A stretch of DNA of 64,000 bases from Octopus sinensis. Its lineage: Eukaryota. Positions 14,914 to 44,133 of the stretch are shown here, in pieces (position 1 is the stretch's first letter; each line of letters begins with the position of its first letter). Where the stretch lies: NCBI RefSeq assembly GCF_006345805.1, contig NC_043012.1, positions 34,286,001 to 34,350,000 on the forward strand, given 5' to 3'. The notes below the pieces were generated by a model. The model was not told the origin of the DNA and searched no databases. It saw only the letters and a list, made by a program, of their open reading frames with translations. Both the position numbers and the translations under genes were made by a program.

Positions 14914-17727
14914 ATGACAGTAAGTTTATTAATTAGTTTTAATTATTAACATTGATATTTCCTATTTTATGCATGTTACTGTTTTTATTGACCATTAGGT
15001 CACCCTTTGATCAAGCAGACGTTCCAACCGTGACTGTTACGACTTTTGGAAGCTTATCAACAACTGCATTACCTAATGTGTTCTCTCCTTTTTAAGGATG
15101 CTTGGTGATTTGAAAGAGATTTGGGAAAGAGATTTGAAGGGGATTTGGTCAAGCAAGTGAAGCGATTACATAGAGGCCTCCTCTAAGTCTAAGATTAGCT
15201 CTAAACAAACAAATCAATGGTCAAAGACATCCCAACTACGACCACCTCACCTTATTTTCAGGCAACGCACTCGGGACTATATTGTATAAAGTACTGTTCC
15301 TTTTTTAAAAGCAATGAGGTAAGGTCTGAGGACGATTTAGCTGCTATGTTCTAATAGGTACCTCTCATTAAATTGGTGAAATCCAGGCGATTGATTAGAG
15401 TCTTGCTGATGATGTTCTAAACATCTGTAGGTCACTTGGTACATTTGTAGATCATCTGTTGGTCGTAGTTTGCAGTGGCGGGGTGGGGATGTGAGTTATG
15501 GCTGGACATAAGGAAGTTTCATAAGTGAAGGGAAGACTGGGCGAAATGTTAAGGATGTCGTAGCTTTGGATGGAAATAGGAGATGGAGTGCAGCATCCTG
15601 GATAAACCGAAGATCGCGAATGTTTCCAGTGGGAGGAAATTGCCCAATAGTTAATGACACTACATGAATTTTTGATTCTAGAAGGTATTTAATAAGTCTG
15701 TCCCAATACAATGGACTCATACTTTGCTTAAAATTCTTAAAAAATGAAACCAAATTTCCACACCACATTCAGTTGGGACACCCTGTATCACTTATACTTA
15801 TTTTACAAATCATATTATTTGCAGTTCATACATTTTCCTAAAACTAATTGAGCCATCGAATTTAGAAATATTTTACAGGTTTCCTTGTTTATGTTCGATT
15901 ACTTTGAATATTGATTTTTTTGTGGTCCAAGTTTCTAATTTTTGCAGACAATATCACTTTCTTTTACCTTATTTGACACGTGAGTAGAACTCGTGTCTGG
16001 AAACATCGTGACATAGATTGTTGAAAAAAATCGACATTAGGGCCCTTCCAATGGATCCTTTTTCTACCACATATTACTAATATTCTATTTAAACACACCA
16101 AGCGAAATAACCAATACCACCTGCAGCTTTTAGCGATGCGATCAATATTTGATTCTCACGACCAGCCAACCTAATTCTACATTTCACTTCTCACAGTTTT
16201 GAACTGCTAAACATTATTATTGCACTTCCTTGATTTGAATCTTAAAACTTAAAGACTTCATTCATACATTTCTATTCATACATGGTTTTTTGAATGCCCA
16301 TTACACCGATAATTCTGCATTTTTACATTTACACTTTCTCAATGACAGTAGATAATTTTTTTAACAACGTATTTGTAGTGGGTTCATGCAGGCATAGCGT
16401 GGCTTCTATCTTCGATTGCCAAATTTCACTTAACACTTCAACAGCGCTTTCCTCATGGTAAAACAATAGTTTTTCTGTGAACAACAACCTCTCTCGCCAA
16501 CCTCCGGAAACATCTCTCTCTCCTCCAGCTGACAGTTTTTGTACTTTTTTGTGACGGAAAATACACCTTTTGTGACAGTCATAACGAAATTGCTTTCTTA
16601 TATCAGAATAATAAGGCGTTTCAATAGAACATCTTTACAAAGAAAATGAAAGACGAAGACAGGTGTAGGAACAACAAGCAGGTGTATTAATTTAACGCTC
16701 GGGAAAAATGGAAATGTCTTTTACGTTTCGAGCCTACGCTCTTCGACAGAAAGGATTAAGAGGACAAAAGGAGAGAAAGAATGAAAAAAACGGAGAGAGA
16801 AGAAAGTGCAGAGTTCAATGGTCCAACATGGCGAGATATACGAGTATATATATCTGTATGTGTATGTATGTATGTATGTATGTGTATGTATGTATGTATG
16901 TATGTATGTATGTATGTATGTATGTATTATGTATGTATAACGGACGTATAGAATATGTCAGAGGTGTATAACAACATCCGATAGTCTGACCGATATAGTG
17001 GTAAGTGATATATAATGCATTATATATTGTATGACATATATGACATATATACTACAATATTGTGTAGAGGTAAAGCCTCCCTTCGGTCATGACTGACCAT
17101 GGGATTGCACCAAGAAAGTTCCCCTCTGAGGCACAAGTCTGAGCAAGGTTGTTTATGGAAGACCAGCAGTCGCCCATGCATACCAGCCTTCCACCTTCAC
17201 GCCACCGATGTCATCCAAAAGAAAGGCAAAGGGGCCGATACAGCTTGGTACCAGTGACGTCACAATTCATTTCTACAGCTGAGTGAACTGGAGCAACGTG
17301 AAATAAAGTGTCTTGCTCAAGAACACAACACGCAGCCCAGTCCGGGAATCGAACTCGTACCTCATGATTGTGAGCCCGACTCTTTAACCACTGATCTATG
17401 CACCTTCACATTGCAATATTGTATAACGTGTATAATATTGTGTTGGATGACGTATTGTATATATCTAATGGCATATAGAACAACATTAAAAGACATTTAG
17501 TCATATAAATGAGTGTAACACAAAACAAACAAAATATTAAACGTTTGAAATTCAAGAATATTCTTTTATAATTCCAGTTTGTGTTGTATATCGCTTCCAT
17601 TTGCTTCTGGCTGTTGGCGCTTTTTTGTGGAGCTGAAAGGAAAATCTCTCTTCAAGGTAAGCAACAGAACGTTTGCCATTTCGACTACTCTACTAATCTT
17701 ACTTCATGCAGTGGTGGTGGTGATGAC

Positions 17728-17815
<88 letters not shown>

Positions 17816-18903: not shown

Positions 18904-18935
<32 letters not shown>

Positions 18936-18998: not shown

Positions 18999-19069
<71 letters not shown>

Positions 19070-19667: not shown

Positions 19668-22600
19668 TACATACATATATATATATATATATATAAAATA
19701 CAAAATAGGACAAGAACGCAAAACATCAAAATAGACGTTACAAAAAACACGGACGGGTCATTCGAAGCCTTTAATCTTTAGCCAAGAACCGGATCATTCT
19801 CCGCGAGGCTGATCTGGTTCTTGACTGCAAGGATGATCCGGTTCTTGACTGCGAGGATTATCCGGTTCTTGACTGAAGATTAAAGGCTTCGAATGACCCG
19901 TCCGTGTTTTTGTATCGTCTATTTGGATGTTTTACGTTCTTGTTCCATTTTGTATTTTTTATATATATATATATATCTACATCTATCATATAGTTACAAG
20001 GTGCATTCCAGAAGTTTCGAGACTGTTTCAGGAGAGACATTTCTTAATTTCAAAGACGTACAAAACTCTAATCCCTTTCAAAGTAGGGTCCTCTGATTTC
20101 AACGCACTTTTGTTGTAGCACTCAAGCTACTTCATGGAGGTCCCATGGAAGTCCTTCAAAGTGAAGGAGTCCACGACCCTTGTCACAGCCCTCTACATCT
20201 TTAGCTTGGGGAACAAAGTCACAAGCAACAAGGACTGGATTGTAGGGAGGGTGAGGGTCAGTTCTGATACCCGTCTTTGTCAAGTAGTTGGTCACCAGGA
20301 CGAAAATGTGGACTGGCGCATTATTTTAGTGCAGGTGCTCCGGCCTTTTGCTCTGACATTTTTCGGAACGCCCTTAAAACTTTCACAAAATACCCTTTGT
20401 TGACCCTCTGGCCAGAGAAAACCCAAATAGATGCCGATGATGCCCTTGCTGTAGAAGAAGGGGATCATCATGCGTTTCCCGGTAAACTTGCTCCAGCTGG
20501 CCTCTTGTGCTAGCGAAGAGCAGATACTCAGCACGGTTAATCCATAAGCTGTCTGGAGCGTTTCACAAGTTTCTGTAGCGTTTTTGCCCAGTTTAACAGA
20601 ACACTTTTGCACAACGAGTTCCCAAATTGTCCTCACGTCCCGACTGCATTCTGCTTTCTACTCAACTGTGAAAAGCAGTGTTTAGTAGGATGTGTTCAAA
20701 ATGATGTTACAGCCGTCTCCTTCAATTTAAAATAACAAAAGTTGGCCGTAAGTCAGCTTTTAGATTTATTGTAATGTTATACTGAAATTACAATAATGTA
20801 GAACAGTTATAACGGCCTCTTCTAAAAAATGTTAAAAACTTCTGGAATGTGTACACACAGACAGAGTGACAGAGAGACGGAGAGACACACACACACGCGC
20901 ACACACACGCGCGTACATACACACACACACGCACACGTACACACACACACACACACACACACAATTCTCTTTTGGGGCGATGGATATCAGAAACTCGAAG
21001 CAGATAAAGTTATAAATAATAGAGTTCAAATTTCGGTTTGAAAAAGCGCTTTGGATACAGAAGTCGAATTCTGCCCGTGGTGCTCGAACCTGTATCTCCT
21101 GTAAACATGACACACATGGTCACAGACTAGATTAAAAAATGTTGACTCTCTCTTATTAAATATAACTATGTCACTTCATGTCAGCCGCCATCAAAGTGGA
21201 TGAGACTACGAGTTTTTTACAAACGCTATTACGTCTGTTCCATCAATCACCGACTTTTATGAAAAAAAAAAAAAAGACACGGAACAAATAATATAAGATG
21301 GCAGACGAGTTGTACGTCTCTGATTGGTTGGTACACATTCTGCATAGGTGTGATATTGATATGGGGCAAAAGAGAGTATTCTCAAGGGAATTAGGAAAAT
21401 AAGATGCAAGTGGGGACAATTAGATTCTTGCCTGCAGTACGTTCCGTAAGACAAATGACGGATCTTTTCGGTTTGAACGGTAGTTTTTATCATAATTTCT
21501 AGGTAACTAAAAAATTTTTAGCTTCGTATACTGGTAGAATGTGTTTATAAAACATCTATTTCTCTTGGCTTTATTGAGAAAATTCTATAGTTTGTAAAAT
21601 ATTTCTTGTTTTTTTCTTCAATTTCTGCAATTTCAACCAATCACTGACGTCCATTGAGGTAAAAAACATTCTGTGCCGTATGAATATGTCCTTCGTTTAA
21701 GAAACAGATTGGGTTTATTTACATTTGTGAAGAAAAAAATATTCCCTTCCCCCCACCCCTAACCCTAACCCTAAAATAGATTGAAATGCAGTAGATCGAT
21801 ACTAGGGTCATAATTATGAGTGACAATTTCATATGACACCGCTAGAAAAAACTGCCGTTCAAACCGAAAAGATCCCAAATGACTTAATCGACGTGTTCTT
21901 TCACAGTGCTGTGTATCCCATCCCAAGTTATTCAAATTAGAATTTCATAGAAAATAAACTGATATTGGTTCGAAAAATCTGTGATTCTTTTTATTTATAT
22001 ATATATTTTTTGTTACTCAGAATGTCAAAGAACCCACCGAGCTCATCCAGGGTCAAGAACAAAATTCCAAATGCTTGATGGAAAGTTTTGGATCGAAGTT
22101 GATTGTGGATTTTTAGTGTGGAACCAGAAGATGTGTCAGTGCACTTATAACAAAATGGATCAGAAAAATAAGTGCAGTGATTTTGTGAAAGGAGAGGCCC
22201 CTGGGTTATACAAACGCTGGAATGGACTGGTTTGGGAATCGAAAGATTGCAACCAATTTATTGGGAAGAAAACCATGATTTGGAATGAAGAGAAGTGTAT
22301 CTGCGACTGGGGCCCAGATGGACGTAAAACGATTGTACATCCAAAAGAAAAAAGTAAGTAGGAGTTTTTAATAAACAGTTTTATATGAAGTGGAAAGTTT
22401 GATAAGAGACAGTTTATAGTTTAGTTTCTGATCAATCTTGATTGAATAAACGTCTTATAAAGACTTTCCCGCCTTTACCATTTCATCTTATTGCAGACAT
22501 AGTCTATCTAGGATTACATAATCTTATATAATCTTTTCTTTTTTTAAAGACAATACGGCGAGGTTTGAGGGAGATTTAGCTCCTATTTTTAGAAGGTTGC

Positions 22601-24488: not shown

Positions 24489-26084
24489 TTTCTTTCTTTT
24501 GCTGTATTCAGTTCCTGCCAAGAACTGCGTCGTCATGCTCAACATCACTTTCGATGCTGGATTTTTCGACAATGCCCACCAGTCTTGGATTGAAAGGCGA
24601 AATATTCCGAACAGCGAATTAGTCCAAGATCCTGCAACAGTTGGATCCGGTCAAGCAGCATGCTTTGACGAATCTCCAATGCTGTCAGCATATTTCATTG
24701 AGAATTCTTTAACAAATAACTTTAATATTGCCTTCAGTTTCAAAATTTGCCAAAAAATGGTGGCAGACGACCGTCTACAGAGCCTTTTCCACAACAGCTG
24801 CTATATTGAAGGCGACGGTGTGATTTCTCCTACTATTTCTTTGAGTTTCCAACCAAAAACTGGTTTATTCATCATTGACATAGATACCGAACACAGCGTT
24901 ATTCCAATCACGGACTCTTGTGTTGCACGCATTGTAAGTATATATGTACGCATGTAACAAGGTATGTATGTATGTATGTATGTATGTATGCATGTATGTA
25001 TGTATGTATGTATGTGTGTATGTATGTATTTATTCAAAATGTGACCGCGTGTGTATCGTTGGCGATTTTTTTCCCTCTGTCTTCCCTTCCTTGGATCTTT
25101 CCTTTTCCTATGTTTCTGACGAAGAGCTCCGCTCGAAACGTTAAATCCTACTTCTTTCTTTCCTTCCCTGAGCGTCCAATAACACTATACTTGTTCCACG
25201 TGCTCGCGTTGTTGTGTTTTCTCTTTGTGTTTTCATTTTTGGATTAACGATATATATATATATGGCAAGCATGCAATAATGAACTATTCAAAACATTGCT
25301 ACATCTGTTTCAATAGCGGAGTTATTTATTTAATAATGCGCATTACATTACATAATATTACGTGATTCTGCATCATTAAGTAACCAAGTAATTTCATCAG
25401 GTGATATTTAGATTTTAATCGAAGGCAGTGAGCTGGCAGAAACGTCAGCACACCGGGCGAAATGCGTAGCCGTATTTCGTCTGCCGTTACGTTCTGAGTT
25501 CAAATTCCGCCCAGGTCGACTTTGCCTTTCATCGTTTTGGGGTCGATAAATTAAGTACTAGTTACGCACTGGGGTCGATGTAATCGACTTAATTCTTTTG
25601 TCTGTCCTTGTTTGTCCCCTCTATGTTTAGCCCCTTGTGGGCAATAAAGAAATAGGTATCGACCTCAATTCACGATTGGTACTTATTCTATTGGGTTCGA
25701 AAGGATGAAAGGCAAAGTCCACCTCGACAAGACTTGAAGTCAGAAGACAAGAGAGTCTAATAACGGAAATCCGGTTCTTTCCCACTTCTGCTGATCATAG
25801 CCCTTTATATTTGATTAAAATATAGAAAAAAGACACAGATTAAAAAACCCAATTGTTTTCGTTTTTTTTTTCTATACAGGATGATTCTGTTTGGAATACG
25901 GTAGAGATGACTTACCAGAATGATATCCTCATCCTCTCAGTTAATCACCAGATTTGTCTTAAATCGACATTTTTCAAAGGTTTGTGACCTTCTTTTACCT
26001 TTTTTTTTTACCCATTATTTTCTTTCGTTTTCTTATCAGAACTTCGAAACATTTCCTCCGGACGGCACTTTCAGCATATCTTGG

Positions 26085-29664: not shown

Positions 29665-29669
29665 ATCTA

Positions 29670-29720
<51 letters not shown>

Positions 29721-29792
29721 TTGTGGAGACGTTTGGTCAATTCAAAGACCCTATACGTGACTTGAATTCTATTTTTACGACTTCAGTGAATG

Positions 29793-30338: not shown

Positions 30339-30465
30339 TCTTTGCAGTATCGGTTGCAAACCCGGGTGTCGCTGCCCGTAACACGGAGGAAAGAAAAATT
30401 AATGAAAACAGGACCCGTCAGAGAAATCATCCTCGTGAGGTGGAGTGCTTGCTACAGCGAGTATC

Positions 30466-31607: not shown

Positions 31608-31701
<94 letters not shown>

Positions 31702-31702
31702 T

Positions 31703-31733
<31 letters not shown>

Positions 31734-31739
31734 GCACAC

Positions 31740-32077
31740 ATGGCTCAGTGGTTAGAGCGTAGCGCTCACATTCATGTATAAGGTAGTGAGTTCGATCTTC
31801 GTACCGGGCTGTGTGTTGTGTTCTTGAGCAAGTCACTTTATTTCACGTTCTTCCAGTTCACTCAGCCGTAGAAATGATTTCCGCCCTTCACTGGTGCCAA
31901 GCTGCATCGGACCCTTTGCTTTCCCTTAGATAACATCAATTGCGTGGAAAAGGGAGCCAGGTATGCATGGGCGACTGCTGGTTTCCCATAAACAACCTTC
32001 CCTGTATTTGTGTCTTGGAGGGGAACATTTTAGGTGCAATCCAATGGTCTTGAGTGACCGATGGGGGTGTCTTTACC
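31740..32077 (+). mobile_element. tRNA-derived SINE family D
   Basis: A box tggctcagtgg, B box gagttcgatc, core ttcttgagcaagtcac. Confidence 0.8.
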
Positions 32078-32137
<60 letters not shown>

Positions 32138-32138
<1 letters not shown>

Positions 32139-32933
32139 GGGTGCGATGGGTAAATTGTTGCCATTTTATGCTTTTAATTTCGCGCATGCGCATTGTTTGT
32201 TTTTGATTTTGTCGACTACACAGCATAGTAGGGTCAGTTGGAGACCTTCTGTGAGAAAAACAGCACCATGATGCAATTCACTCTACCAGGATTTTGGAAA
32301 AGACATGCTGTACTGCTTGGCATTCGCGCCGGAAGCTCTAATACGAACATTTCAGAGCGTTTGGGTGTCATTCTGAGGACAGTGCAATCTGAGGACATGT
32401 ACTGAGAGTGGTAAAAATCAAACATCCAGTCAACATCATGGCGTTTGGAGTAATCACTAGTGATGGCGACGTTATACCTCCATTCATCTTCCCACACGGC
32501 CGCAGACTCAACGCGGTGGCCTACATCAAGTGCCTGGAGGAGGTAGTGCTGCCCTGGGTGAAGAGGGTGGCTGCTGAAAGACTCTATGTCTAGCAACAGG
32601 ACACTGCATCATGCCACACAAGCAGGAGAACCCAGTCATGGCTGTCAGACAATTTGTGCGATCACATCGCTCCTAACATCTGGGCACCTAACTCCCCACA
32701 CTGCAACCCCATTGATTACTAAAGATGAACTGAAGGCAAGGATGATGGCATCATCTACAAACTCAAACAACGAGACCGTCCAGAAGAGTTGCAGGAGATT
32801 TCGAAGTCGTTTCGAGGCCGTGTTTGAAGGCAATGGTGATTTTATTGAATAAATTTACTCTTTAGTATTTCAAGATATTTTTTATATAATTTGGTAAAAT
32901 GAGATGTCAGTACTATTTTCACTTTTGCGTACA

Positions 32934-32936
<3 letters not shown>
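32138..32936 (+). mobile_element. Decayed Tc1/mariner-superfamily transposon (maT/DD37D-like) between (TA)n tracts
   Basis: KHPVNIMAFGVITSDG...FIFPHG...YIKCLEEVVLPW...QQDTASCHTS...WAPNSPHCNP...RRFRSRFEAVFEGNGDFIE, with stops and deletions. Confidence 0.8.
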
Positions 32937-33004
<68 letters not shown>

Positions 33005-33006
33005 AT

Positions 33007-33042
<36 letters not shown>

Positions 33043-33043
<1 letters not shown>

Positions 33044-33452
33044 GGCACAGGAGTGGCTGTGTGGTAAGTAGTTTGTTTACCGACCACATGGTTCCGGGTT
33101 CAGTCCCATTGTGTGGCACCTTGGGCAAGTGTCTTCTACTATAGCCTCGGGCCGACCAAAGCCTTGTGAGTGGATTTGGTAGACGGAAACTGAAAGAAGC
33201 CTGTCGTATATATATATAATATATATATATATGTATGTGTTTGTGTGTCTGTGTTTGTCCCCCTAGCATTGTTTGACAACCGATGCTGGTATGTTTATGT
33301 TCCCGTTACTTAGCGGTTCGGCAAAAGAGACCGATAGAATAAGTACTGGGCTTACAAAAGAATAAGTCCCTGGGTTGAGTTGTTCGATTAAAGGCGGTGC
33401 TCCGGCATGGCCGCAGTCAAATGACTGAAACAAGTAAAAGAGAAAGAGAAAG
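33043..33452 (+). mobile_element. tRNA-derived CORE-type SINE family C with an internal (TA)n
   Basis: Head gtggctgtgtggtaag...gggttcagtccc, CORE-like accttgggcaagtgtctt, tail (aaagag)n. Second copy at 56008-56412. Confidence 0.85.
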
Positions 33453-33469
33453 ATATATATATATATATA

Positions 33470-33830
33470 TATCAAATGTGAAGATAAAATTCTTTTCGAA
33501 AAAAAATATTTTCTCGAAAAAAATCTTATCAATGGCCAGCATATTAAAAAATACCTTTAACGGTTAAATTTATAAACAATTCATAAATGAGGGCAAAGGA
33601 AAAAATTTTCTAATGCCAAATATGCCGAAAAATTGGACATATTGTCCATTAACCATATAATTTTTTCACAATACGCACGCTAATCGAAAAAGGTCGACAG
33701 AAATTTCTAAAAAATTCCATTATTACCATATCGGACCGATTTCAGAGTTAGCTACTAAGAGCCCTCTCTTCGTCAGTGATACATGTGGCAAAAGAAATAA
33801 ATGAGATACTATGTATGTATATATATATAG
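33470..33830. repeat. Interspersed repeat, unclassified; also at 59650-59950
   Basis: Shares ttatcaatggccagcata...aaaaatacctttaa...gccaaatatgccgaaaaa with 59650-59950. Both copies abut (TA)n. Confidence 0.65.
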
Positions 33831-34190
33831 ATAGATAAAAAAGGAAATAAAGTTGAAAAAAGCACAGACGTATATCTTGGAGCATGTTTAATAAAATATT
33901 AAAAAAAACATTCCCTAAAGCATTCTCTAAAATATACTTCTGTTCCTTTTGACTTACAGAATTATTTGACTTACAGAACTAGGATTTTTCACTAAATCTG
34001 TGAATAAAAACAAGTTTAGCTTATCAAATTGGAAAATTCTCACTTCGCCGGGATGAACATACTATAATACTTTTGGTTAAACCTCTACACGCTTTACATA
34101 TTTCACCTGCTCTATGTACAAGCTTAATTTACACTTCTACTTTTTGGGCATATATTCAGTCCACCACCACCACCACTACTACTACTACTA

Positions 34191-34235
<45 letters not shown>

Positions 34236-35494
34236 AGTATGTCGGCTCACTTAGTTATCTTAAACAAAATATGACAAAATGAAATTTCCGTAACTCACGA
34301 TTTGATTGCATTGTAATAAATTAATTTCTCAGTAAAGTGTTTCGAACAAGGATTCACTTTCCAATTAAACACGTTTCCATTGACTTTGCCAATTGTCCCC
34401 AAAGAAAGAAACTGGCCTTATAGTCTCACACAAGCCAATGAATTTGCTGTCCACATCTGTTGTGTGCTTCGGAAAATATTGCCTGCATCCTGTTTATTGG
34501 TCACCGAAGATTGTTCAAAACTGTATAACGCGCTAGAAAATGGGGACTTCTGCTAGAGATAATAGCATCCTTTATAGACACCTAAAGGGATAGGGTCAAC
34601 TAGCCGGTGATGATCCTCACTCACTCACACAATAATTGCTTTCATGTAACTCGTGTTTCATGTCAACGTGATTGTCAGGGGAGAACTACTCTCGCTTGAT
34701 GATCGAGAGTGAATGAAACTTTAGTCGCGTGAAAGAAATTCACCTGAAATAAACCATAAAATCTGTAGCATATATTGATTCCTCTCCTCATCCATTTAAC
34801 AAAAGATCGGAAGAATAAGGAATAATTGTGGTGGAAAGTATGTGGGTACCCTGCCGGATTAAAGATACGACCTGTCGAAAGGGAAGTTACGGCGAGCCAT
34901 GCTTGGAGAGGATGCAAGTTTATGCACGCTTTGCTGTACACCTACAGACTTCTTTGGTTATAGCTTTTGGATGGATAAAGACTATAGAACAATAGAAATG
35001 GTAGAGCGCCATATTTAGTGTAATCCCTCAGAGTTTTGAGTACAAAACTTGTCGGGGTCGCCTTCGTCTTTTCCTCTTCGGTAATAAGGGACAAGCAAAG
35101 TACCACTTGTATATTATTATGAGTTCCATTGTCTATGTCTATCTTCCTCTCTTATGAAACTGTGAATAAATTTTTTAATGATAGAAACATTTGCGCAGAC
35201 ATTTTAGAAGGCAGGAATCATCAAATTCTCAGGTGATTGTTTCTATAGCAACAGAATACTGATCACTATGCACTTGTTAGACCTGCTAGATATAGCAGTC
35301 AAATCTTTCACAAACCAATATTTTAACTGAGCAGGGATGGCAGCATAGTTAAGAACTTCAGGAGGCAGTGAGTTGTTTTCAGTAAATAATTATGAAATGT
35401 TTGGGTATTTTTTGTTAACAAACTACCCGAACATATTTTGTGTTGTAAAAGAACAATGGAATGATATGTGTACATCTCTCTTTCTTTCTCTCTT

Positions 35495-35545
<51 letters not shown>

Positions 35546-35942
35546 TCCTTTCTCTGCCTGTCTTCACCTTTTAAAACCTGCTTAGGCTGACTTGATCATT
35601 TCATAACATCTGCTCTTGTGAACTTGTATAAATGCTAAACATCAACATATTAACGAACCCAAGAAGCAATCCCTACTAAGTCTCGAGACATGACAGGTAT
35701 GGCAGAAAAATCTATCTCAAAATGAGTCCTGCCATCTTCCAAAAGGAAATGTTTCGATAATATGGTCCTTGCTTCTCTACACTAAGGAAAAAATAGGATG
35801 GTCACGACTGGAACACTTTTGTTCAAAGGAGTGCTCGATCGAGGCTGAAATTAGACTAAACCAAGTCAATAGGTTGACTTTTATAGGTGAGTGGGTTAGC
35901 AGAGACAAAGGAGCGGCAGGACAAGTAACTGAAGTATTTAAA

Positions 35943-36173
35943 GGCGGTGAGCTGGCAGAAACGTTAGAACGCCGGGCGAAATGCTTAGCGGTATTTCGTC
36001 TGCCGTTACGTACTGAGTTCAAATTCCGCCGAGGTCGACTTTGCCTTTCATCCTTTCGGGGTCGATAAATTAAATACCAGTTACACGCTGGGGTCGATCT
36101 AATCGACTTAATTCGTTTGTCTGTCCTTGTTTGTCCTCTTTGTGTTTAGCCCCTTGTGGGTAGTAAAAAAATA
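35943..36173 (+). mobile_element. SINE family A copy
   Basis: Full length, with a degenerate TSD aagtaactg(a/g)a. Confidence 0.85.
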
Positions 36174-37684
36174 AGTAACTGGATTATTTAATTTTTTTAT
36201 ATTTTACATTCTGAGTTCAAATCTTGCATAGGTTAAATGTGTCTTTCACTCTTCAGATGTCGATATAATTAAAGTACCAATCAAGTACAGTGGGAGATAT
36301 AATTAACTGTTCTCCCTTCCCCGCAAACTCTGTGCTCTTGTTTTAAAGCAAGAAATCAATATTTATTAACCATTTAGCATTTAAACCGACCATATATGAC
36401 CAAAATATTCTGTCTATTTTATGTTCAAACTGGTCAGATCAGGCCTCTAACAGCTATCCTACAATGTTATTGTAAAAATAAACGATCGCATTATTAGAAT
36501 CTTGAAGTTACAAGATAATGCATGATTAATCCAAGACAACGTGAATAAATAAGCATTAGATTTGATAGAGTAATCTGAATGCTAAAGGATTAAAAATGAA
36601 GGGAGATGAACGACTTCACTGGTTTAGTATCAGGATATAGCTTTTTTTTTTTACATATATTTGCGCTCTGAGTTCAAGCCTTTCTAGGGTTGGCTCTTTC
36701 TGGAATCGATAAAATATCGTTTCAACCAAATACTGAAAGATAGATTTAATCGACAGAGCTCTTCCCACAAAATTATGTTCTTGAACCAATATTAAAAATT
36801 TTTTTTTTTGATCTACAAAAGAGTGGTGGAACGTCGGATTAGTTCCATCCGTCTGTGTATCGAAACTGATTTTGTCTTCGATCTCTTCTGGCGGATATAA
36901 TAAATATTGGTTATATGTTGACCTCTTCTATTGACCTCTTATATGTTAACCTGGGGAACTAATCAGTTTATTTCCACTTAGCTGAGTTCAATAGGTATTT
37001 ATACCCGTCTTCGTGTTATTATGCAGTGGATGAGAAATATATATTTCCTTTCATCCCGGATAGAGCGCTAGCGCTCCTATTGGAGCTTTCGCCGTAAACA
37101 GATTTGGATTTCTCAATACTTCAGATCAACGAAGCAATTGTTTTCTTTCATAGTACTGTCGCTTTTTACAACAGTGAATTAAACCATTTTGTGTTAGATA
37201 AAGATACTGGAACACGACCAACAGATGCCAGTATTAAAAGTACTGCTTGGATTAACGAGTTATTTCACTTACAACAACAAATGAACGATTAAAAGAATTT
37301 ATTTTTCAAATGATTGAACATGAATGAAATTTTCTTCAATTATTGTAAACATGTGAAGTGCTACAAATAGAATCTAAATGTAAATCGCAGTTTCGTCCTT
37401 AATTTGGTGAACACTGCCTCCACAGCAAGATCTGAAAATAGAAATTTTCTGATTAAAGTTCATTTCAATAGATTTTTTTATTAAAAAGAAAACTTTATTT
37501 CGAATATTTGACATCTGACGCACCAATGCCTGAATCTCTAATATGCTTATTCGATTTGCTAGAATTACCAACAAAAATCTCCGTTAATACCTTACTGTCT
37601 TATAAAAAAAAAGAACTCATTTGTTAACGTAGTCCTAGATACACTAGGTAATGTAATAATATCAGTGAAAGACTAGTGCTTATT

Positions 37685-39560
37685 TTACTTAATACCAGAT
37701 GAAGTCTTAGGGGCAATTTGAAAAGAGAACATTACCCTAGTATTATCACAACCCACTAACTGGAACTAGTAAAAGAGTATAAAGACAGATTTTGAAGGCA
37801 TTTAGTTGGTGCCATACCATTTTTACCATTTCATCTTATCTAACACTTAAATATCTAAGATAAATCACGAGTAGTTGAGAATGGATATTTTACTTACATC
37901 ATCTATGTAACCATAGAAAAAACTTTGTTTAGTTGGGTCACCTCCAATGGTAAGAGGACATTGGGAATTCTGTATATATTCTGAAAGCAATGAAAATACC
38001 CACGTATTAAGACTCAGTTTGGAAAAGCTTATACAGAGAAAATCAATTACAAAATCATTAATTAAGTACCAGTTACGCACTGGGGTCGATGTAATCGACT
38101 TAATCCGTTTGTCTGTTCTTGTGTGTAGCCCCTTGTGTGTAGCCCGTTGTGGGTAGTTTGTCTGTTCTTGTGTGTAGCCCCTTGTGTGTAGCCCCTTGTG
38201 GGTAGTAAAGAAATAGGTATTATGGTTACCACGGCCGACTGGATTACAATAGAGAGAGAGTGAGAGAGAGAGAGCGAGAGAGAGAGAGAGAGCGAGAGAG
38301 AAGAAAGAGAGAGGAGAGAGAGAGTGAGAGTGAGAGAGGGCATGATGTATGGATCCCAGTACTTATCTGGTACTTTATCACTCGGCGAGAAGAGCAGGCA
38401 AAGCTGACCTCAATAGGATTTGAACTAAGAACATAGACAACCAGAAGAAACACTGTAAAGTCTTCAGACCGACATTCTAGTAACTTCACCTTACACAGAC
38501 ACACGCCCGCACGCCCGCACGCACTCACAAACACATTCCACGCGTATGATTGTCAATCCTAGGCTATTGCAAGAAAGACTTGTCCAGCCTGCCATAGTGT
38601 GAGAGATCAAATGTGGTTGCGATGCAAACTTAACCACAGAACCAGAGTCAATCAAGAGGAAAAAAACAAAGCAAAGAACAGTATGTAGGTCGACACTTTC
38701 TGCTCAACAAAACGAAATCTCGAAAACAACGTTAAAAACCAAACACTGACCTGGAAACATGTGTGACTTTAGAACTTCCTGCCCGTCCATATTTATTACA
38801 ACGTTGCCTTTTGTTATTGTAATGTTCACTTGGTGCCAGATTTCAGCTTCCTGTTGTGTTTGGTATGGGAAGAAAAGGAAGACATATGATTCTCTTTTAG
38901 GCGTTTCACATAAAAAACACCACACAGCAAAATAATTCTATACATGAAAGCATGTGTATATACCTAAAATGTATTTAGTTTTGTTGAATAACTTTTAGGT
39001 TAAGTTGACGTGTGAAGCCAGACGTTCGCTATTTCGAAATCCTTTTTAAATTCATCTCTAATTGTTTCAAGAATATTAAGTTACAGCATAGCATTTTTTG
39101 TCATTGTAGAATTGAACTAGCAAAAAAACATGTGAAAGGAGAGCCACTGCTTAGTCACTCGAACTGCTGAAAATGGCACCAAAATCTCCCTCAAGTCATA
39201 CTTTACAGTCTTTATAAAGAGCACATTGGATAATGTAATTTTAGATACACAATGCCTGCAAAATAGAAGGGATGGCAATTGTTGATGCACACCCTAATAT
39301 ACCAAAATACGAAATGGTCATGGGTGGAACGCTTTTAATCACAATTCTTCTCAATCATTGTTGAATTAGGATTAAACAATAACTGTATAGCAATAGGAAG
39401 TTCAATTTGAGAAGGTCAGCAAAGACTATGGACATTGTCCTTGTCTGCTGTCACCGGAATGACACATAAATTTATTTCTATGAGGTTGAACAAACTAGCA
39501 TCGAAGAGATTCCGAAATCGCGATCGTATGGAGGTTGTTAGGCAGTCGTCCTCATTAGCT

Positions 39561-39634: not shown

Positions 39635-42600
39635 GTGTGTGATTAACTTACCAAATTAACCTGGCCTTCTTCGTAGTGTTCGTTTATGGCGAATCCTATT
39701 ACATCAATTTTTGGAAACAGAGTGAGACTTAATGTAGATTCAGAGATGTTGCTTTCGCTGTCATAGCAGGCGTTAGAGAGTATTACCATTTCAGTGGAGT
39801 TTGTTGCTAATTCTATTCGTTTAAAATAAAATTCAATTTTCAGATGATTACTGTATGAGTTTCCAGCGAAGAAAAGAATTCGTAATAATCCTGGGTGGAA
39901 ATAGCCACTAACACTATCCTCTCGTTCGTTCCTGTTGGCTGGGCGTATTTCTACTTTTTGCTCAACACTTATAAAAGCATTTTTTGCGTAGTCACGAATG
40001 ATGCTTTCATCGAATGTAATGTTTAAGGTGAGATCACAGCCTCCTTCTGGAACGTAAGTAAATAAATATCGATTAAAACCAATTTAGAAACAACCCACAA
40101 AAAATATTGTAGAATAGTGAAATCTCAGTGAAACAAATTGCATTGATTTCTAAAGACTTAGAAAAAAAGTTACTTTAATGTTCACATTAACCTGAAGAAG
40201 ACATCAAAAGTCTTGAAGTGTGCTGATTGTCCTTGGGATAACCAGACGTGGAAAGGACGGCCAGTTTTTAGTTTGAATTATTATATATTGGTCGCTGGAT
40301 AAGTAAACCTACACACATCACAGAACGCATAAAAAATGAAGGAAAAAGCAAAAAAGCAACCCGACTGATTGGTGTAAAGTCATTCGCCAACACAGTCAAA
40401 TCTCTAATCCACACCCATGCCGCCTCTCCTCTATATCTTTTCAACCGTCACTACACTGATCTTTCTTTCTCAGAGTTGGCTGCCATCTTCATTCAATATT
40501 TCCCAAATTACTCGTCTTTCTACCCGTCGTCATAGTGTGATGACAGGCACCACACTATCTACTCCACCCGTCCTTCCACTGTTCCGCATCTCCCCTTCAA
40601 TGTTGTTTGTTTGTTCTTTCTCGAGCCATGCTTGGCTCATAAGGGCCGGCTTCCCGGTTTCCTTGGCGTATAGGTTTCTCACTTGGACGGGACGCCGGTC
40701 CGTCGCAGGTGAGCTGCAAGATGCAGGAGAGGAAAGAGTGAGAGAAGGTTGTGGCGAAAGAGTTAGCAGAAGTTCGTCATTACCTTCTGCCGGAGCCGCG
40801 TGGAGCTTAGGTGTTTCGCTCATAAACATACACATCGCCCGGTCTGAGATTCAAACCCGCGAGTCCGCTGCTCTAACCACTAGGCCATGTGCCTCCCCTT
40901 CAATGGCACCACACTTACTACTCCACCCGTCCTTCCACTGTTCTACATCTCCCCTTCAATGGAACCACACTTACTACTATACCCGTCCTTCCTGTCCATG
41001 TTTTACCCCCGCAGCTATCAGTCCTATCCACATTGAGCTCTGTAATCTTGGTGGCCCTGCCAGCATCATGAGCACAAACTCCTTCCTCCAACCAAAATAA
41101 TCAAAATAACGAAGATTTGCGGTAAGGGGATTTATAAACTAAAAGAAACGAAATAACTTACAACCATGAATCGAAACCGCATCGTCTACTCGAGTCGTTA
41201 ATATTTTTCACTACGGTAGTCGCCATCATATTTGCTGTTAACAATGATTTTAGAAAATAGCTTAAGAAGTAGATAAACGAGGGTTTACATGACCATTAAG
41301 CCCGTCTCAAAGATACTATATCAGTTCGAAAAACTACAACTGGTAATTTCAACTGAGTTACAAACTCCCTTTACAATCTGCTTACTTCTACTCTCTGGGA
41401 TCTACCAGAACAGCTACTAATTCTCTGAACGATTCAAATATTTCCTTTCAAGGTATTATTCTTATGTAACTTCAACAGAAATATGGCAATTGTAACATCG
41501 TTTTTCCCTCTGGGTAGAGAGACAATAGGTACTCTAACCTAACTTCATTCAGTGAGGAACAACGAATACAGTGTCGATGTGGAATGACCTTGGGGATAGA
41601 GAATTGGGCTCCCTACTCTAAGGTTCGTGAGTTGAAGTGCAGGCGTTCTGTTGTGTATGCTGCATTCCTTCAGTCTCTGTAATTCTCTGGAGTAGATAGA
41701 ACTTCTCTCCTGTTATTTACGAAACGCTACGGAAAATACAAACCCTAGACCTACGAAGTGTATGAAAGAGTTAACTTTATTAATTCTTATCAACCAATTA
41801 AAGTTATTACCTTCAGTTGGAGAAAAAAACTGGTGTCCGGGTGCCCAATCGCACTGGCAAAGATCTTGGTTCCAGATTAAACCGTAATGACATTTTTGAG
41901 TGACCCATCTCTCAAAAGCAAACACTTGGAATTGGTGAGCATTAGATTCATCCGGAAGATATCCACTGCACTTTTCTTCCGTATCATTCTTATTTGAGTT
42001 TTCGACAACTTTTTTCGATGCTGTCTCAGTCAAATTGTTTACATACATCACTTGATCATTATCATCCAGTGCATCTTGTTGAGGAATTTCAGTTACATTT
42101 CCCACTGCCTCCGTCGTAGATAACACTAAGCTTAAGTTTCCAGATTCTTCTTGAAATAATGAAGTGTCTGTTTCGGTGTTATTTGTTGACACAGAAGTTT
42201 GTTGTGGTGTTTGCAGGGAGTAGTTAAATGTGGTGGTTAAATGTAGGGTGTCTGGCGTATCTGAAATAGAGCAGTTTTAATTTCACGGAAGTACGCATAA
42301 TTTAAAATGGAAGTATTTTCTTGAAACTGTTACAACACTTTAAGACTCAACCGACTTCCATTTCCCTCACACACACACCCATTTGTTCATTCATTTATTC
42401 TGGCAGCCATTCATTCATTCATCCCCACGTAACAGTACGGTGTTTTAAGCAATCAGAGGGAGTCTCTCTGCGGTCGCTCGGGGGTGCTAGAAATAGCAGA
42501 TATATATATTCTTCAAACCACACTCTACTTTCTTACAAATGAAGGACACATTGAATTACGTAACTCTAGATACATTGCCTGCATAAATTCAATATCCAAA

Positions 42601-44133
42601 GACTTTCCATCGACTAATGGTTATGATTGGAATATCTTTCGCTTGGGCAGGATTGACCCAGCATGAAACAACAGCAACAAAATTAGTTCAGATTTAACGA
42701 GGGAGTCTCTATCTAGTTGCTTGGTATGCTAAAAATAGCAGCCAAATATTCCTCGGATCAAACTTTAGGATACATTGAATTACGTGTTCCTGAAAAAAAG
42801 ACGAGGTTGACCTGGGGTAAACAACAATCTGGTGTGATGGTTTCTGAACCACAACTAATTATTTCTAATTTTCTTGTAGTATTTACCTGATGAGAGACAG
42901 TATTTCCCCTACATAAATATCGCTGGTCTCTTGTAACAATGAAAATACTGTCCAGTTCTGCAGTGTTGTAGTGCTGCTAAAATCAGTGTTTTACGATTTT
43001 ACAGCTAAGAGTTCTAGACCATTGAGAGCAGAGTCAGGACAAATTGAGTCTTGGTCAGGACAAAATGTAGCCCTAGTATTAGGATACGAAACATTGCCCT
43101 CCTGACTGGTGTGAATAATTAAACTATTTAGTTTGTTCATCATGTTAGTGTTAGATGTATATGACATGCTAATGAGGAAGCCTTTACATGATCGCTCTAC
43201 TGGGTAGAAATAGCAGCTAAATCACCCTCATATCACACCCTACCGTCTGAAAAATGGAAGGACATTGGATAATAAAGAGCTGGGTACATATAATCTGCAG
43301 AAAATGACAGGATTGGATGGTCAAGGCTTGTATGCTTTTCACTTTAGATCTGCTCAATCAAGACTGACCTGGGGCTAAACAGCGGCTACAGCCTTTTCTC
43401 ATGTAAATGACAGGCAAAATTCCTTCTATGATATTTGATTACGTCCCTTTACGTTCTGAGTTTAAATTCCACTAAGATTAACTTTGCTTTTCCTCTGTCG
43501 AAAGTCTACCCAGGTGGGATTTGAACCCAGGACTTAAGTGGAGATTCTAATTCATGTTAGTTGTTAAGTTATGGGTTTGACGGAAAGTACAGCGTACCTG
43601 ACTTCAGCAATATTTCTCAAAGAATCAGAATTGGGATTCCCCCTTTAGGGTTTCATTTAAACAGATCTGAAATTTCAATCGTATGATTTGAAGTATAATA
43701 TAGATGAGGGGAGGAGGAGGAGGAGGAAGAGGAGGAAGAGGAGGAAGAGGAGGAAGAGGAGGAGGAGGAGGAAGAGGAGGAGGAAGAGGAAGAGGAGGAG
43801 GAGGAAGAGGAGGAGGAGCAGCAAAATACTGTTTCATTTGGTGGCGTTTATTAGAGGGTTTTCATGAGTTTACTAGAGGAAAAAAAAAGAAGCCATTGGA
43901 ATCCAAACACTTAAGAATCACTAATTTAAGGAATTAGGTTCTCCCCGCCCACCACCACATCTCTTCATTCTGTCCATGAAATGTTAATCAAAGTGTTCTC
44001 AATGAAGATTCTAAAACTCACATGTCAGTTGTTTCAGTGACGTCATCGGACTTTCGGTTCCTGGTTTTGGTTGACTGTCGCAGACATGACACAGCAACAG
44101 AGTGAAACACACAGCCAACAGATCCATTGTCAT
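37685..44133 (-). CDS. Paralogous secreted protein: Ser/Thr/Asn-rich acidic stalk, one ChtBD2-like module and a Laminin-G-like domain (Pif/LamG3-like, about 406 aa). Exons 44133-44022, 42260-41811, 40046-39652, 38850-38751, 37980-37898, 37765-37685
   Basis: GT-AG junctions with phases 1,1,0,1,0; total 1221 nt, open. Signal peptide (MT)MDLLAVCFTLLLCHVCDS. Module KCSGY...WVTQKCHYGLIWNQDLCQCDW. LamG-like region GCDLTLNITFD...LKIEFYFK...ILSNACY...WHQVNITI...QCPLTIGG...FYGYIDD-FQLVGC. The 100-nt exon is the same length as in the plus-strand paralog. The last exon boundary is uncertain: a possible donor after DNTR could splice to TVRY* near 37590. Confidence 0.82.
40628..40892 (-). mobile_element. 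tRNA-derived SINE family B, diverged copy
   Basis: Matches 48493-48789 (ggaaaccgggaa, ccacgaggctccggcag, gagcgaaacacctaagc). Confidence 0.75.
43705..43818. repeat. (GAG/GAA)n homopurine tract
   Basis: ggaggaggaagagg repeats, giving poly-G/R and poly-P artefact ORFs. Confidence 0.9.

What the first reader, a model, noticed from the sequence alone, without database searches (positions are those of the whole stretch)
14914..44133. Tail-to-tail pair of Pif/LamG3-like chitin-binding plus Laminin-G genes in an apparently shell-less cephalopod
Seen: two convergent genes, 9 kb apart, share the LNITFD, N-x-CY, W-x-x-V and CPL-x(7-11)-F-x-G-x-x-D motifs, identical intron phases through the LamG region and a 100-nt exon, yet are highly diverged. 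Established: the ChtBD2 plus LamG architecture characterises Pif, BMSP and LamG3 molluscan shell-matrix proteins, and neither gene here has vWA. Inference: an old inverted duplication of a shell-matrix toolkit gene, retained for other chitinous structures (beak, radula, sucker cuticle, stylet, gut matrix). The convergent arrangement allows antisense read-through.
Basis: partly seen in the sequence, partly recalled or inferred. Interest (0 to 1): 0.72.

Follow-up and report, generated by a model that had tools for sequence, protein, structure and literature searches.

The report
Ancient tail-to-tail chitin-binding/LamG gene pair
Two real octopus genes facing each other tail to tail encode secreted proteins that are distant, VWA-less relatives of the mollusc shell protein Pif; snails and limpets have the same pair in the same arrangement, so it is over 500 million years old and not tied to having a shell.

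Summary
Gene A (+, 14914-28706, 7 exons, 344 aa) and gene B (-, 44133-37399, 6 exons, 390 aa) converge across 8.7 kb. They share the quoted motifs, four intron phases and a 100-nt exon, at about 23% identity (BLASTP E 2e-18).

Gene B is identical to Octopus sinensis LOC118766613. A 344-aa gene is annotated where gene A lies.

Both carry a signal peptide, one or two four-cysteine ChtBD2-like modules and a confidently predicted ConA-like/LamG jelly roll. Neither has VWA.

They belong to the VWA-less "LamG3-type" branch of the Pif-related superfamily. They are not orthologues of Pif or BMSP, and they do not show the three-ChtBD2 architecture of the described cephalopod LamG3/Pif-like protein.

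A and B are two ancient paralogue lineages, each with gastropod orthologues. The convergent A/B pair is also found in Argonauta, Lottia, Patella and Littorina; in Lymnaea the two are adjacent but on one strand. So the duplication and the arrangement predate the gastropod-cephalopod split.

No member of either lineage could be linked to a shell proteome with the means available here. Function is inferred: a secreted chitin- or glycan-associated matrix protein.

The parts
14914..14919 (+). Gene A exon 1 (ATG ACA, then GTAAGT donor)
   Evidence: The sequence GAAAATATGACAGTAAGT is conserved in A. hians L003 at 9160-9180. Phase 0.
17578..17656 (+). Gene A exon 2: rest of the signal peptide (FVLYIASICFWLLALFCGAERKISLQ), ends in phase 1
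   Evidence: Conserved exon with the same borders in A. hians L003 9423-9498. Joins in frame to exon 3.
22021..22353 (+). Gene A exon 3: two four-cysteine ChtBD2-like modules
   Evidence: 62% identical to A. hians over the exon. Paralogous to gene B exon 2. Phase 1 to 1.
24512..24933 (+). Gene A exon 4: N-terminal two thirds of the LamG domain (LNITFD, N-S-C-Y)
   Evidence: P0003 and P0005 match it.
25880..25979 (+). Gene A exon 5: the 100-nt exon (W-N-T-V strand)
   Evidence: A 100-nt phase 0-to-1 exon is also found in Lottia, Patella and Lymnaea homologues.
27633..27700 (+). Gene A exon 6 (CPLILPGEDFCGCLDE)
   Evidence: 96% identical to A. hians.
28680..28706 (+). Gene A terminal exon (VIIRRGCL, stop)
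   Evidence: The A. hians P0003 protein ends in VIIRRGCQ.
28707..37398 (.). Intergenic region between the two 3' ends (8,692 bp). It is repeat-rich and holds a minus-strand exon at 29071-29211 used by a chimeric O. vulgaris model.
37399..37431 (-). Gene B terminal exon (ILLWRQCSPN, stop)
37898..37980 (-). Gene B exon 5 (CPLTIGGDPTKQSFFYGYIDD)
38751..38850 (-). Gene B exon 4: the 100-nt exon (W-H-Q-V strand)
39652..40046 (-). Gene B exon 3: N-terminal two thirds of the LamG domain (LNITFD, N-A-C-Y)
41811..42260 (-). Gene B exon 2: Ser/Thr/Asn-rich, sequon-rich linker plus one ChtBD2-like module
   Evidence: CBM_14 scores 20.5 bits, below the 22.1 cutoff.
44022..44133 (-). Gene B exon 1: start codon and signal peptide (MTMDLLAVCFTLLLCHVCDSQ...)
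   Evidence: 100% match to P0001.

Best explanation
Shown. The window, which matches the Octopus sinensis record for gene B and its flanks, holds two intact protein-coding genes lying tail to tail. Each encodes a small secreted protein with three parts:
- an N-terminal signal peptide;
- one (B) or two (A) short four-cysteine modules that resemble the C-terminal half of a ChtBD2/peritrophin-A chitin-binding domain;
- a C-terminal concanavalin-A-like/LamG jelly roll with four conserved cysteines.
Gene B additionally has a Ser/Thr/Asn-rich, sequon-rich linker.

The two genes are not a recent octopus duplicate. They represent two paralogue lineages (A-type and B-type) that already existed in the common ancestor of gastropods and cephalopods. 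They have stayed next to each other, in convergent orientation, in octopods, limpets and a periwinkle.

Together with a third lineage (C-type: octopus LOC115227684, abalone and bivalve genes), they form an unnamed subgroup of the VWA-less 'LamG3-type' proteins. Those proteins are remotely related to the LG region of Pif and BMSP.

Inferred, not shown. The proteins probably act outside the cell as matrix or cuticle adaptors. The ChtBD2-like modules would hold on to chitin or another glycan polymer, and the LamG domain would bind a second partner (glycan or protein). The family is kept in shell-less octopuses and sea slugs, and the cephalopod proteins lack the long charged tail of the gastropod B-type proteins. 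The role is therefore more likely general chitinous or mucous matrix than carbonate shell building.
For: Gene models:
- Canonical splice sites and open frames.
- Gene B is identical to O. sinensis LOC118766613.
- A 344-aa gene is annotated at gene A's place.
- Orthologues exist in O. bimaculoides and A. hians, and there is an intron-less contig from a public sequencing run (P0006).

Fold:
- Laminin_G_3 scores 29.9-31.3 bits against a cutoff of 27.6 for B.
- AF2 gives pLDDT 87.9, pTM 0.85 for the B domain.
- AF2 gives pLDDT 80.5 for the A. hians A orthologue, with most of the LamG part above 90.
- Foldseek top hits for both are ConA-like jelly rolls, E 5e-10 to 1e-8.

Family:
- The profile search of 1.84 billion representatives gives 644 hits.
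- Every full-length ChtBD2+LamG hit whose source name was looked up is from a mollusc; three further ones come from unnamed sequencing-run contigs or were not looked up.

Ancient A/B split:
- NJ tree.
- Reciprocal HMM scores: A scores 182 bits against the gastropod-A profile and 138 against gastropod-B. B scores 155 against gastropod-B and 98 against gastropod-A.

Conserved convergent pair:
- A. hians, Lottia and Patella, Littorina.
- In Lymnaea the two are adjacent on the same strand.
- The 100-nt exon is conserved across classes.

Relation to Pif: hhalign gives 98.8-99.6% to the pectinid 'shell matrix protein-like' set and 85-95% to the Pif/BMSP LG alignment taken from PMC7299971.
Against: - Chitin binding is not established. 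CBM_14 is below threshold in B and absent in A. The modules lack two of the six canonical cysteines seen in the Pif/BMSP ChtBD2 alignment.
- No expression, tissue or proteomic data could be obtained. No paper in the searchable library mentions these loci.
- The tree is neighbour-joining on 268 columns. The node joining cephalopod B to gastropod B has under 50% bootstrap, and the node joining A to gastropod A has 64%.
- The true cephalopod LamG3/Pif-like sequences (Ocbimv22010162m, Aargo013232) were not available. Non-identity with them rests on architecture only.
Confidence: 0.8

Rival explanations
1. The pair is an old inverted duplication of a shell-matrix toolkit gene (Pif/BMSP/LamG3) that a shell-less cephalopod kept and redeployed for beak, radula, sucker cuticle, stylet or gut matrix.
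For: - Architecture of CB-like plus LG without VWA.
- Remote but significant profile similarity to LamG3-type shell-matrix-protein-like proteins and to the Pif LG region.
- The literature already holds that octopods keep LamG3 genes for unknown, non-shell roles (PMC9635652; bioRxiv 10.1101/2021.07.10.451900).
Against: - The A and B lineages exist separately in gastropods. The pair is already convergent there, so nothing was duplicated or inverted in cephalopods.
- No A- or B-type protein could be linked to a shell proteome. A main-text search for the Lottia ID found nothing. The one SMP sequence available for comparison, the Lymnaea Pif-like SMP Ls-SMP-88, is a different gene with 6-Cys ChtBD2.
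- Orthologues are retained in shell-less Elysia and Plakobranchus.
Confidence: 0.3
2. The proteins are secreted lectin-like or mucin-like factors (mucus, immunity, egg coat) with no chitin role. On this view the cysteine modules are merely small disulfide knots that resemble ChtBD2.
For: - CBM_14 is below the Pfam cutoff in B and not found in A.
- There are only four cysteines per module.
- The best structural matches of the LamG part are carbohydrate-binding jelly rolls.
- Gene B has a long sequon-rich Ser/Thr linker typical of mucin-like proteins.
Against: - The module keeps the most conserved ChtBD2 core (C-x-x-G-L-x-W-N/D-x(4)-C-x-C-x-W). It gets CBM_14 as its best Pfam match in B and in several gastropod orthologues.
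- The whole ChtBD2+LamG unit aligns with LamG3-type proteins, one of which (P0115) carries a precomputed CBM_14 annotation.
Confidence: 0.25
3. The tail-to-tail arrangement is itself functional. It would be kept for half a billion years because the two 3' ends share regulatory sequence or regulate each other by overlapping antisense transcription.
For: - Convergent adjacency is conserved in three gastropod genera and two octopod genera despite heavy genome rearrangement. The gaps are only 0.7-1.4 kb in limpets.
- One O. vulgaris gene model runs on the minus strand from gene B to an exon 365 bp beyond gene A's stop codon.
Against: - Lymnaea has the two genes on the same strand, so the orientation can change without losing the genes.
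- The octopus gap is 8.7 kb of repeats.
- The chimeric model also fuses an unrelated PLA2 gene and looks like an annotation artefact.
- No strand-specific expression data were available.
Confidence: 0.2

Closest known systems
[quoted passage not shown] 2017; Setiamarga et al. 2021; Bai et al. 2023, PMC10543319)
   Same: - Secreted.
- Chitin-binding-type module(s) followed by one ConA-like/Laminin_G_3 domain, with no VWA.
- Present in shell-less octopods.
- Profile-profile probability of 98.8-99.6% to pectinid 'shell matrix protein-like' members.
   Different: - The described cephalopod member has three SMART ChtBD2 domains. A has two degenerate four-cysteine modules and B has one.
- In the NJ tree A, B and C form a group apart from the pectinid SMP-like proteins (82-100% bootstrap).
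- No shell or eggcase proteome evidence exists for A or B.
Pif (Pinctada fucata Pif97/Pif80) and the Pif/BMSP family (Suzuki 2009, 2013; PMC11291548)
   Same: - A chitin-binding-type region followed by an LG-like region.
- Shared LG motifs: S-N-G-(D)-C and C-x-L-x-I-G-G...F-x-G-x-D.
- hhalign 85-95% over about 110 columns.
   Different: - No VWA domain, which is the family's defining domain.
- No acidic/basic low-complexity Pif80-type tail in the octopus proteins.
- ChtBD2 modules with four rather than six cysteines.
- An HMM of the Pif/BMSP LG alignment does not detect A or B directly.
Ls-SMP-88, the Pif-like shell protein of Lymnaea stagnalis (PMC7299971)
   Same: Two chitin-binding modules plus Laminin_G, no VWA, secreted.
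   Different: It is a different gene, with canonical 6-Cys ChtBD2. The motifs of the Lymnaea A-type and B-type genes were not found in that paper's supplementary files.
Peritrophin-type (CBM_14) mucin-like proteins of invertebrate gut and cuticle (from general knowledge)
   Same: Gene B combines a signal peptide, a Ser/Thr-rich glycosylation-prone linker and a peritrophin-A-like module.
   Different: Those proteins have arrays of 6-Cys CBM_14 domains and no LamG domain. The resemblance is architectural only and was not tested here.

Membership tests
Pif/BMSP family (VWA-defined; Suzuki 2013; PMC11291548) | At least one von Willebrand factor A domain | tested here: not met
   A Pfam scan of the gene B model (380 aa, lacking only the last 10 residues) and of gene A from the ChtBD2 exon onward finds no VWA at E<=1.
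Pif/BMSP family (VWA-defined; Suzuki 2013; PMC11291548) | Canonical six-cysteine ChtBD2/CBM_14 domain(s) | tested here: not met
   CBM_14 scores 17.9-20.5 bits in B, below the 22.1 cutoff, and gives no hit in A. The modules have 4 Cys, against 6 in the Pif/BMSP ChtBD2 alignment.
Pif/BMSP family (VWA-defined; Suzuki 2013; PMC11291548) | LG region homologous to that of Pif/BMSP | tested here: inconclusive
   hhalign gives 85.3% (A), 91.5% (B) and 94.9% (A+B) against a 13-sequence trimmed LG alignment. HMM-to-sequence searches find nothing for A or B. Specificity relative to LamG domains in general was not measured.
Pif/BMSP family (VWA-defined; Suzuki 2013; PMC11291548) | Charged low-complexity (Pif80-type) region after LG | tested here: not met
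   The octopus proteins end 8-10 residues after the LamG core. Gastropod B-type orthologues do have long Asp/Ser/Lys-rich tails.
LamG3 in the operational sense (chitin-binding + ConA-like LG, no VWA; PMC10543319) | ConA-like lectin/LamG domain | tested here: met
   Laminin_G_3 scores 29.9-31.3 bits, above the 27.6 cutoff, for B. AF2 models for the B domain and the A. hians A orthologue give Foldseek matches to ConA-like jelly rolls.
LamG3 in the operational sense (chitin-binding + ConA-like LG, no VWA; PMC10543319) | Chitin-binding domain | tested here: inconclusive
LamG3 in the operational sense (chitin-binding + ConA-like LG, no VWA; PMC10543319) | Absence of VWA | tested here: met
LamG3 in the operational sense (chitin-binding + ConA-like LG, no VWA; PMC10543319) | Secretory signal peptide | tested here: met
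   Read directly from the models: MTFVLYIASICFWLLALFCGA (A) and MTMDLLAVCFTLLLCHVCDSQ (B). No signal-peptide predictor was available.
Cephalopod LamG3/Pif-like clade (argonaut eggcase / Nautilus shell protein; Ocbimv22010162m, Aargo013232) | Three consecutive ChtBD2 domains followed by Laminin_G3 | tested here: not met
   A has two modules and B has one. The architecture is as described in bioRxiv 10.1101/2021.07.10.451900.
Cephalopod LamG3/Pif-like clade (argonaut eggcase / Nautilus shell protein; Ocbimv22010162m, Aargo013232) | Placement inside that clade in a phylogeny | not testable with these tools
   The reference sequences could not be retrieved. The nearest named proxies, the pectinid 'shell matrix protein-like' proteins, fall outside the A/B/C group.

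The most novel reading that the evidence does not exclude
The convergent A/B pair is a conserved functional unit more than 500 million years old. On this reading the two secreted ChtBD2-like/LamG proteins are co-regulated through their facing 3' ends and work together, for example as a heteromeric chitin-matrix organiser, in a structure common to all conchiferan molluscs such as the radula, jaw or foregut cuticle. It would be a previously unrecognised core component of the molluscan chitin toolkit, independent of shell formation.
Probability: 0.15. Interest if true: 0.7.

Novelty: new member of a known kind. Interest (0 to 1): 0.45.

Why it matters
Work on Pif, BMSP and LamG3 proteins treats ChtBD2+LamG genes mainly as shell-matrix tools, and asks why shell-less octopods keep them.

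This locus shows that part of that superfamily is older and broader than the shell story. There are two unnamed paralogue lineages. Each is conserved from limpets to octopuses and is also kept by shell-less sea slugs. They have stayed tail to tail in lineages whose genomes are otherwise heavily rearranged.

That gives a concrete and cheap test: where are A and B expressed, and do they bind chitin? The answer bears on whether the ancestral role of the Pif-related superfamily was non-mineral chitin-matrix organisation.

It also warns against calling every ChtBD2+LamG gene a retained shell gene. For genome annotators, it names two 'uncharacterized' loci and flags a chimeric PLA2/gene B model in O. 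vulgaris.

Tried and rejected
1. The first homology search, with the gene B LamG exons, returned nothing. A later profile search found the identical O. sinensis protein, so the first result was a false negative of the word index.
I used database proteins and their substrings instead.
3. My provisional terminal exon for gene B (WVVIILG at 37755) was wrong. The annotated protein ends in ILLWRQCSPN, encoded at 37431-37399.
4. A scan for a one-exon signal peptide for gene A found only microsatellite artefacts. The true 5' end is split: a 6-nt first coding exon plus a 79-nt exon. It was found through conservation with Argonauta.
5. I considered that one copy might be a pseudogene. Rejected: both frames are open, all splice sites are canonical, and orthologues are conserved.
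6. I tried to retrieve the true LamG3/Pif-like reference sequences or gene IDs from three papers' supplements and failed. Only trimmed Pif/BMSP domain alignments were found.
7. A last homology search, seeded with a 3xChtBD2+LamG contig from a public sequencing run and a scallop SMP-like protein, gave only scallop proteins.
8. Literature searches for the locus names and for Lottia 168772 gave nothing.
9. Foldseek hits to the lectin-like sub-domain of clostridial neurotoxin binding domains are generic ConA-fold matches at 11-17% identity. I did not pursue them.
10. Pfam found nothing in three transposase-like ORFs, and there are no tRNA genes in the window.


Full report
**What is in the sequence**

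The window is AT-rich, microsatellite- and SINE-laden animal DNA. LNITFD is at 24538-24555 (+) and 40026-40009 (-). CPL-x(n)-F-x-G-x-x-D is at 27653-27697 (+) and 37960-37901 (-). I rebuilt both genes from splice sites and reading frames.

**Gene B (minus strand)**

Gene B has six exons: 44133-44022, 42260-41811, 40046-39652, 38850-38751, 37980-37898 and 37431-37399. All have AG/GT borders. The product is 390 aa and is identical, residue for residue, to Octopus sinensis 'uncharacterized protein LOC118766613' (P0001). O. bimaculoides LOC128249524 is 95% identical and Argonauta hians Ahia01_000783500 is 72% identical. I first guessed a wrong terminal exon. The database protein corrected it.

**Gene A (plus strand)**

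Gene A has seven exons: 14914-14919, 17578-17656, 22021-22353, 24512-24933, 25880-25979, 27633-27700 and 28680-28706, giving 344 aa.

Its odd 5' end is a 6-nt coding exon (ATG ACA) followed by a 79-nt exon that completes a signal peptide. This is supported by conservation of both exons and their splice borders in A. hians.

The O. sinensis record carries a 344-aa gene on the opposite strand. It starts exactly 8,693 bp beyond gene B's end, which is the distance in the window.

**Paralogy**

From the ChtBD2 exon onward both genes have exon start phases 1, 1, 0, 1, 0 and a 100-nt fourth-from-last... more precisely, a 100-nt exon at the same position. The proteins are only 23% identical, but BLASTP gives E 2e-18, and profiles of the two lineages align with 100% probability, E 9e-45.

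**Domains and fold**

Gene B passes the Pfam gathering score for Laminin_G_3 (29.9-31.3 bits against 27.6). It gets CBM_14 only below threshold (17.9-20.5 bits against 22.1). Gene A gets neither. Neither gene has VWA.

AlphaFold2 on a 24-sequence family alignment gave pLDDT 87.9 and pTM 0.85 for gene B residues 134-390. The A. hians orthologue of gene A gave pLDDT 80.5, with most of the LamG part above 90.

Foldseek against the PDB returns, for both models, concanavalin-A-like jelly rolls at E 5e-10 to 1e-8. They include a carbohydrate-binding domain of a GH43 arabinanase, the LamG/TSPN domain of NEL, a pentraxin-like domain, and the lectin-like sub-domain found in clostridial neurotoxin binding domains. 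These are fold-level matches at 11-17% identity and nothing more.

The cysteine modules (C-x(25)-C-x(10)-C-x-C) have four cysteines. The ChtBD2 domains of Pif, BMSP and Pif-like proteins have six. Chitin binding is plausible but unproven.

**Relatives**

A profile of the ChtBD2+LamG unit was searched against 1.84 billion representative proteins. It gave 644 hits at E<=1e-3. The hits that cover the whole unit (E 1e-53 to about 1e-9) come from molluscs wherever a source name was looked up. Those named are 'uncharacterized' or 'hypothetical', apart from a few domain-based labels and one scallop 'shell matrix protein-like'. They include:
- gastropods: Babylonia, Patella, Bulinus, Biomphalaria, Lymnaea, Littorina, Batillaria, Lottia, Haliotis, Gigantopelta and Aplysia;
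- the shell-less sea slugs Elysia and Plakobranchus;
- bivalves: Mytilus, Pinctada, Saccostrea, Pecten, Mactra and Dreissena;
- a third octopus paralogue, LOC115227684, on another chromosome.

Lower hits are generic LamG repeats in giant proteins.

**Three old lineages**

A neighbour-joining tree (268 columns, 200 bootstraps) and reciprocal HMM scoring divide the family into three lineages.
- A-type: octopus and argonaut gene A with Lottia 168772, Littorina, Lymnaea CAL1542758 and Elysia (64% bootstrap for the grouping).
- B-type: octopod gene B and P0006 (an intron-less contig from a public sequencing run, species unknown) next to Patella 827323, Babylonia, Batillaria, Aplysia, Lymnaea CAL1542759, planorbids and sacoglossans (below 50% for the junction).
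- C-type: abalone, Patella 828403, Gigantopelta and the bivalves, with octopus LOC115227684 assigned to C only by its HMM scores; in the tree it falls outside the A/B/C group.

Profiles built from gastropods alone score as follows:

| Query | Gastropod-A profile (bits) | Gastropod-B profile (bits) |
|---|---|---|
| Gene A | 182 | 138 |
| Gene B | 98 | 155 |

Pectinid 'shell matrix protein-like' proteins, a unionid protein and P0115 (a contig from a sequencing run, 3xChtBD2+LamG) lie outside A/B/C (82-100% bootstrap).

**Synteny, the main new result**

The A/B neighbourhood is shared across classes.

| Species | Arrangement | Gap |
|---|---|---|
| Octopus (window) | A (+), B (-), convergent | 8.7 kb |
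| Argonauta hians | B (+), A (-), convergent | 3.1 kb |
| Lottia gigantea | A (+), B-type (-), convergent | 0.7 kb |
| Patella vulgata | B (+), A-type (-), convergent | 1.4 kb |
| Littorina saxatilis | A (+), B-type (-), convergent | 5.7 kb |
| Lymnaea stagnalis | adjacent, about 15 kb apart, no called gene within the 10 kb read on each side, same strand | about 15 kb |

The 100-nt phase 0-to-1 exon is present at exactly that length in Lottia A and B, Patella A and B, and Lymnaea B.

The simplest reading is that the duplication, the exon structure and the tail-to-tail orientation were all in place before gastropods and cephalopods diverged. On the usual dating that is Cambrian. One later inversion occurred on the lineage leading to Lymnaea.

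Between Octopus and Argonauta the block extends to an Exo_endo_phos gene upstream of A and a PLA2 gene upstream of B.

**Relation to Pif, BMSP and LamG3**

The literature uses 'LamG3' in two ways.
- Operationally, it means chitin-binding plus ConA-like LG without VWA (PMC10543319). By that definition the window genes qualify, with a caveat on the chitin-binding domain.
- As a clade, the cephalopod 'Laminin G3/Pif-like' protein of the argonaut eggcase and Nautilus shell has three ChtBD2 domains plus Laminin_G3. It is already known to persist in O. bimaculoides. The window genes do not have that architecture. I could not obtain those sequences to test identity directly.

The Pif/BMSP family proper is defined by VWA (PMC11291548), which is absent here.

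I took the trimmed Pif/BMSP/Pif-like LG alignment published with PMC7299971 and compared profiles.

| Comparison | hhalign probability |
|---|---|
| Pectinid SMP-like group vs Pif LG | 98.6% |
| A and B vs SMP-like group | 98.8-99.6% |
| A and B vs Pif LG | 85-95% |

An HMM of the Pif LG alignment does not pick up A or B directly. So the genes are remote members of the Pif-related superfamily, in unnamed ancient subfamilies.

**Function**

Nothing here measures function. The following is shown:
- secretion signals;
- a conserved disulfide-rich module of ChtBD2 type;
- a LamG jelly roll with four conserved cysteines;
It is conserved in most B-type proteins, in cephalopod and Lottia A-type, and in several bivalve C-type proteins;
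- retention in shell-less lineages.

Gastropod B-type proteins carry 250-1,400-residue Asp/Ser/Lys/Asn-rich tails after LamG, for example poly-Asp and KTAQRGD repeats in Babylonia. These recall the charged region of Pif80. Cephalopod B-type proteins lack such tails and instead have an N-terminal Ser/Thr/Asn-rich linker.

My inference is an extracellular adaptor between chitin (or another glycan polymer) and a second matrix partner. In octopus this would act in non-mineral chitinous or mucous matrices. I put about even odds on the chitin part.

**Antisense read-through**

The only hint is O. vulgaris model P0007. It joins PLA2 exons (58.4-54.6 kb) to gene B exons 2-3, and then to a minus-strand exon at 29211-29071, which lies 365 bp beyond gene A's stop codon. 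It looks chimeric and cannot be weighed without reads.

**Verdict**

The finding is real and was read with unusual accuracy. The family assignment is right at superfamily level and too specific at family level. The evolutionary story needs replacing: this is not a cephalopod relic of a shell gene but an ancient, conserved, convergent pair of uncharacterised mollusc genes. Both genes are already annotated, and octopod LamG3-type genes are already discussed in the literature, so novelty is modest. I found no description of the deep conservation of the pair in the papers available to me.

Noticed in passing
window 49790-58480 (-): A secreted-type phospholipase A2 gene (PF00068) lies upstream of gene B, with exons near 58480-58340, 56803-56612, 54694-54542 and 49903-49790. 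It is a conserved neighbour in O. sinensis and A. hians. A PLA2 of a different Pfam family is among the Nautilus shell-matrix proteins (PMC8700984 supplement). That is probably coincidence.
   Followed up: partly
window 29071-29211 (-), with 39910-42270 and 54566-58444: O. vulgaris protein 'basic phospholipase A2-like' (P0007, 395 aa) is a chimeric model. It joins PLA2 exons, gene B exon 2 and part of exon 3, and an exon just beyond gene A's 3' end. It is either an annotation artefact or evidence of long minus-strand read-through transcripts.
   Followed up: partly
window 42-5250 (+): Exons of an Exo_endo_phos (DNase I-like) gene lie here, 70-80% identical in protein to the gene upstream of gene A in A. 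hians. The syntenic block Exo_endo_phos / A / B / PLA2 is therefore shared by Octopus and Argonauta.
   Followed up: partly
window about 13360-13550, 25650-25750, 27000-27180, 30400-30900, 36000-36200, 38050-38220, 44790-44980: There are many copies, on both strands, of one short interspersed repeat. In translation it reads ...YFFTTHKGLNT...RKDERQSRPRRNLNS.... Copies lie in introns of both genes and in the intergenic region. No tRNA gene was called by ARAGORN.
   Followed up: no
window 20134-20636 and 32234-32852: These ORF fragments look to me like mariner/Tc1-type transposase remnants. One is in gene A intron 2 and one is in the intergenic region. Pfam gave no hit at E<=1e-3, so this is unverified.
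   Followed up: partly
L005 (Lymnaea), P0009, P0011-P0014, P0024: Gastropod B-type orthologues have long Asp/Ser/Lys/Asn/Gly-rich low-complexity tails after the LamG domain, 250 to about 1,400 aa. Babylonia has poly-Asp and about a dozen KTAQRGD repeats. Cephalopod B-type proteins have none. These tails could be mineral-interacting regions analogous to Pif80.
   Followed up: no
P0088 / P0169 / P0170 (O. vulgaris, O. bimaculoides LOC106873707, O. sinensis LOC115227684): A third octopus ChtBD2-like+LamG paralogue lies on another chromosome and scores best against the C-type lineage (abalone and bivalves). It has an Asn/His-rich insert inside the LamG domain and no Pfam hit.
   Followed up: partly
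window 24538-24546 and 40026-40018; family alignment: The LNITFD motif contains an N-x-T glycosylation sequon placed four residues after the first conserved LamG cysteine. It is conserved in B-type proteins from cephalopods and gastropods, in cephalopod and Lottia A-type proteins, and in several bivalve C-type proteins. It is lost (N to R/K) in other gastropod A-type proteins.
   Followed up: partly
window 14000-14450, 16840-16960, 17700-17830, 18800-19100, 43630-43870 and elsewhere: Very dense microsatellites, (TA)n, (CA)n, (CAA)n, (GGA)n and (TATG)n, generate most of the long 'ORFs' in a mechanical ORF list. None is coding.
   Followed up: no
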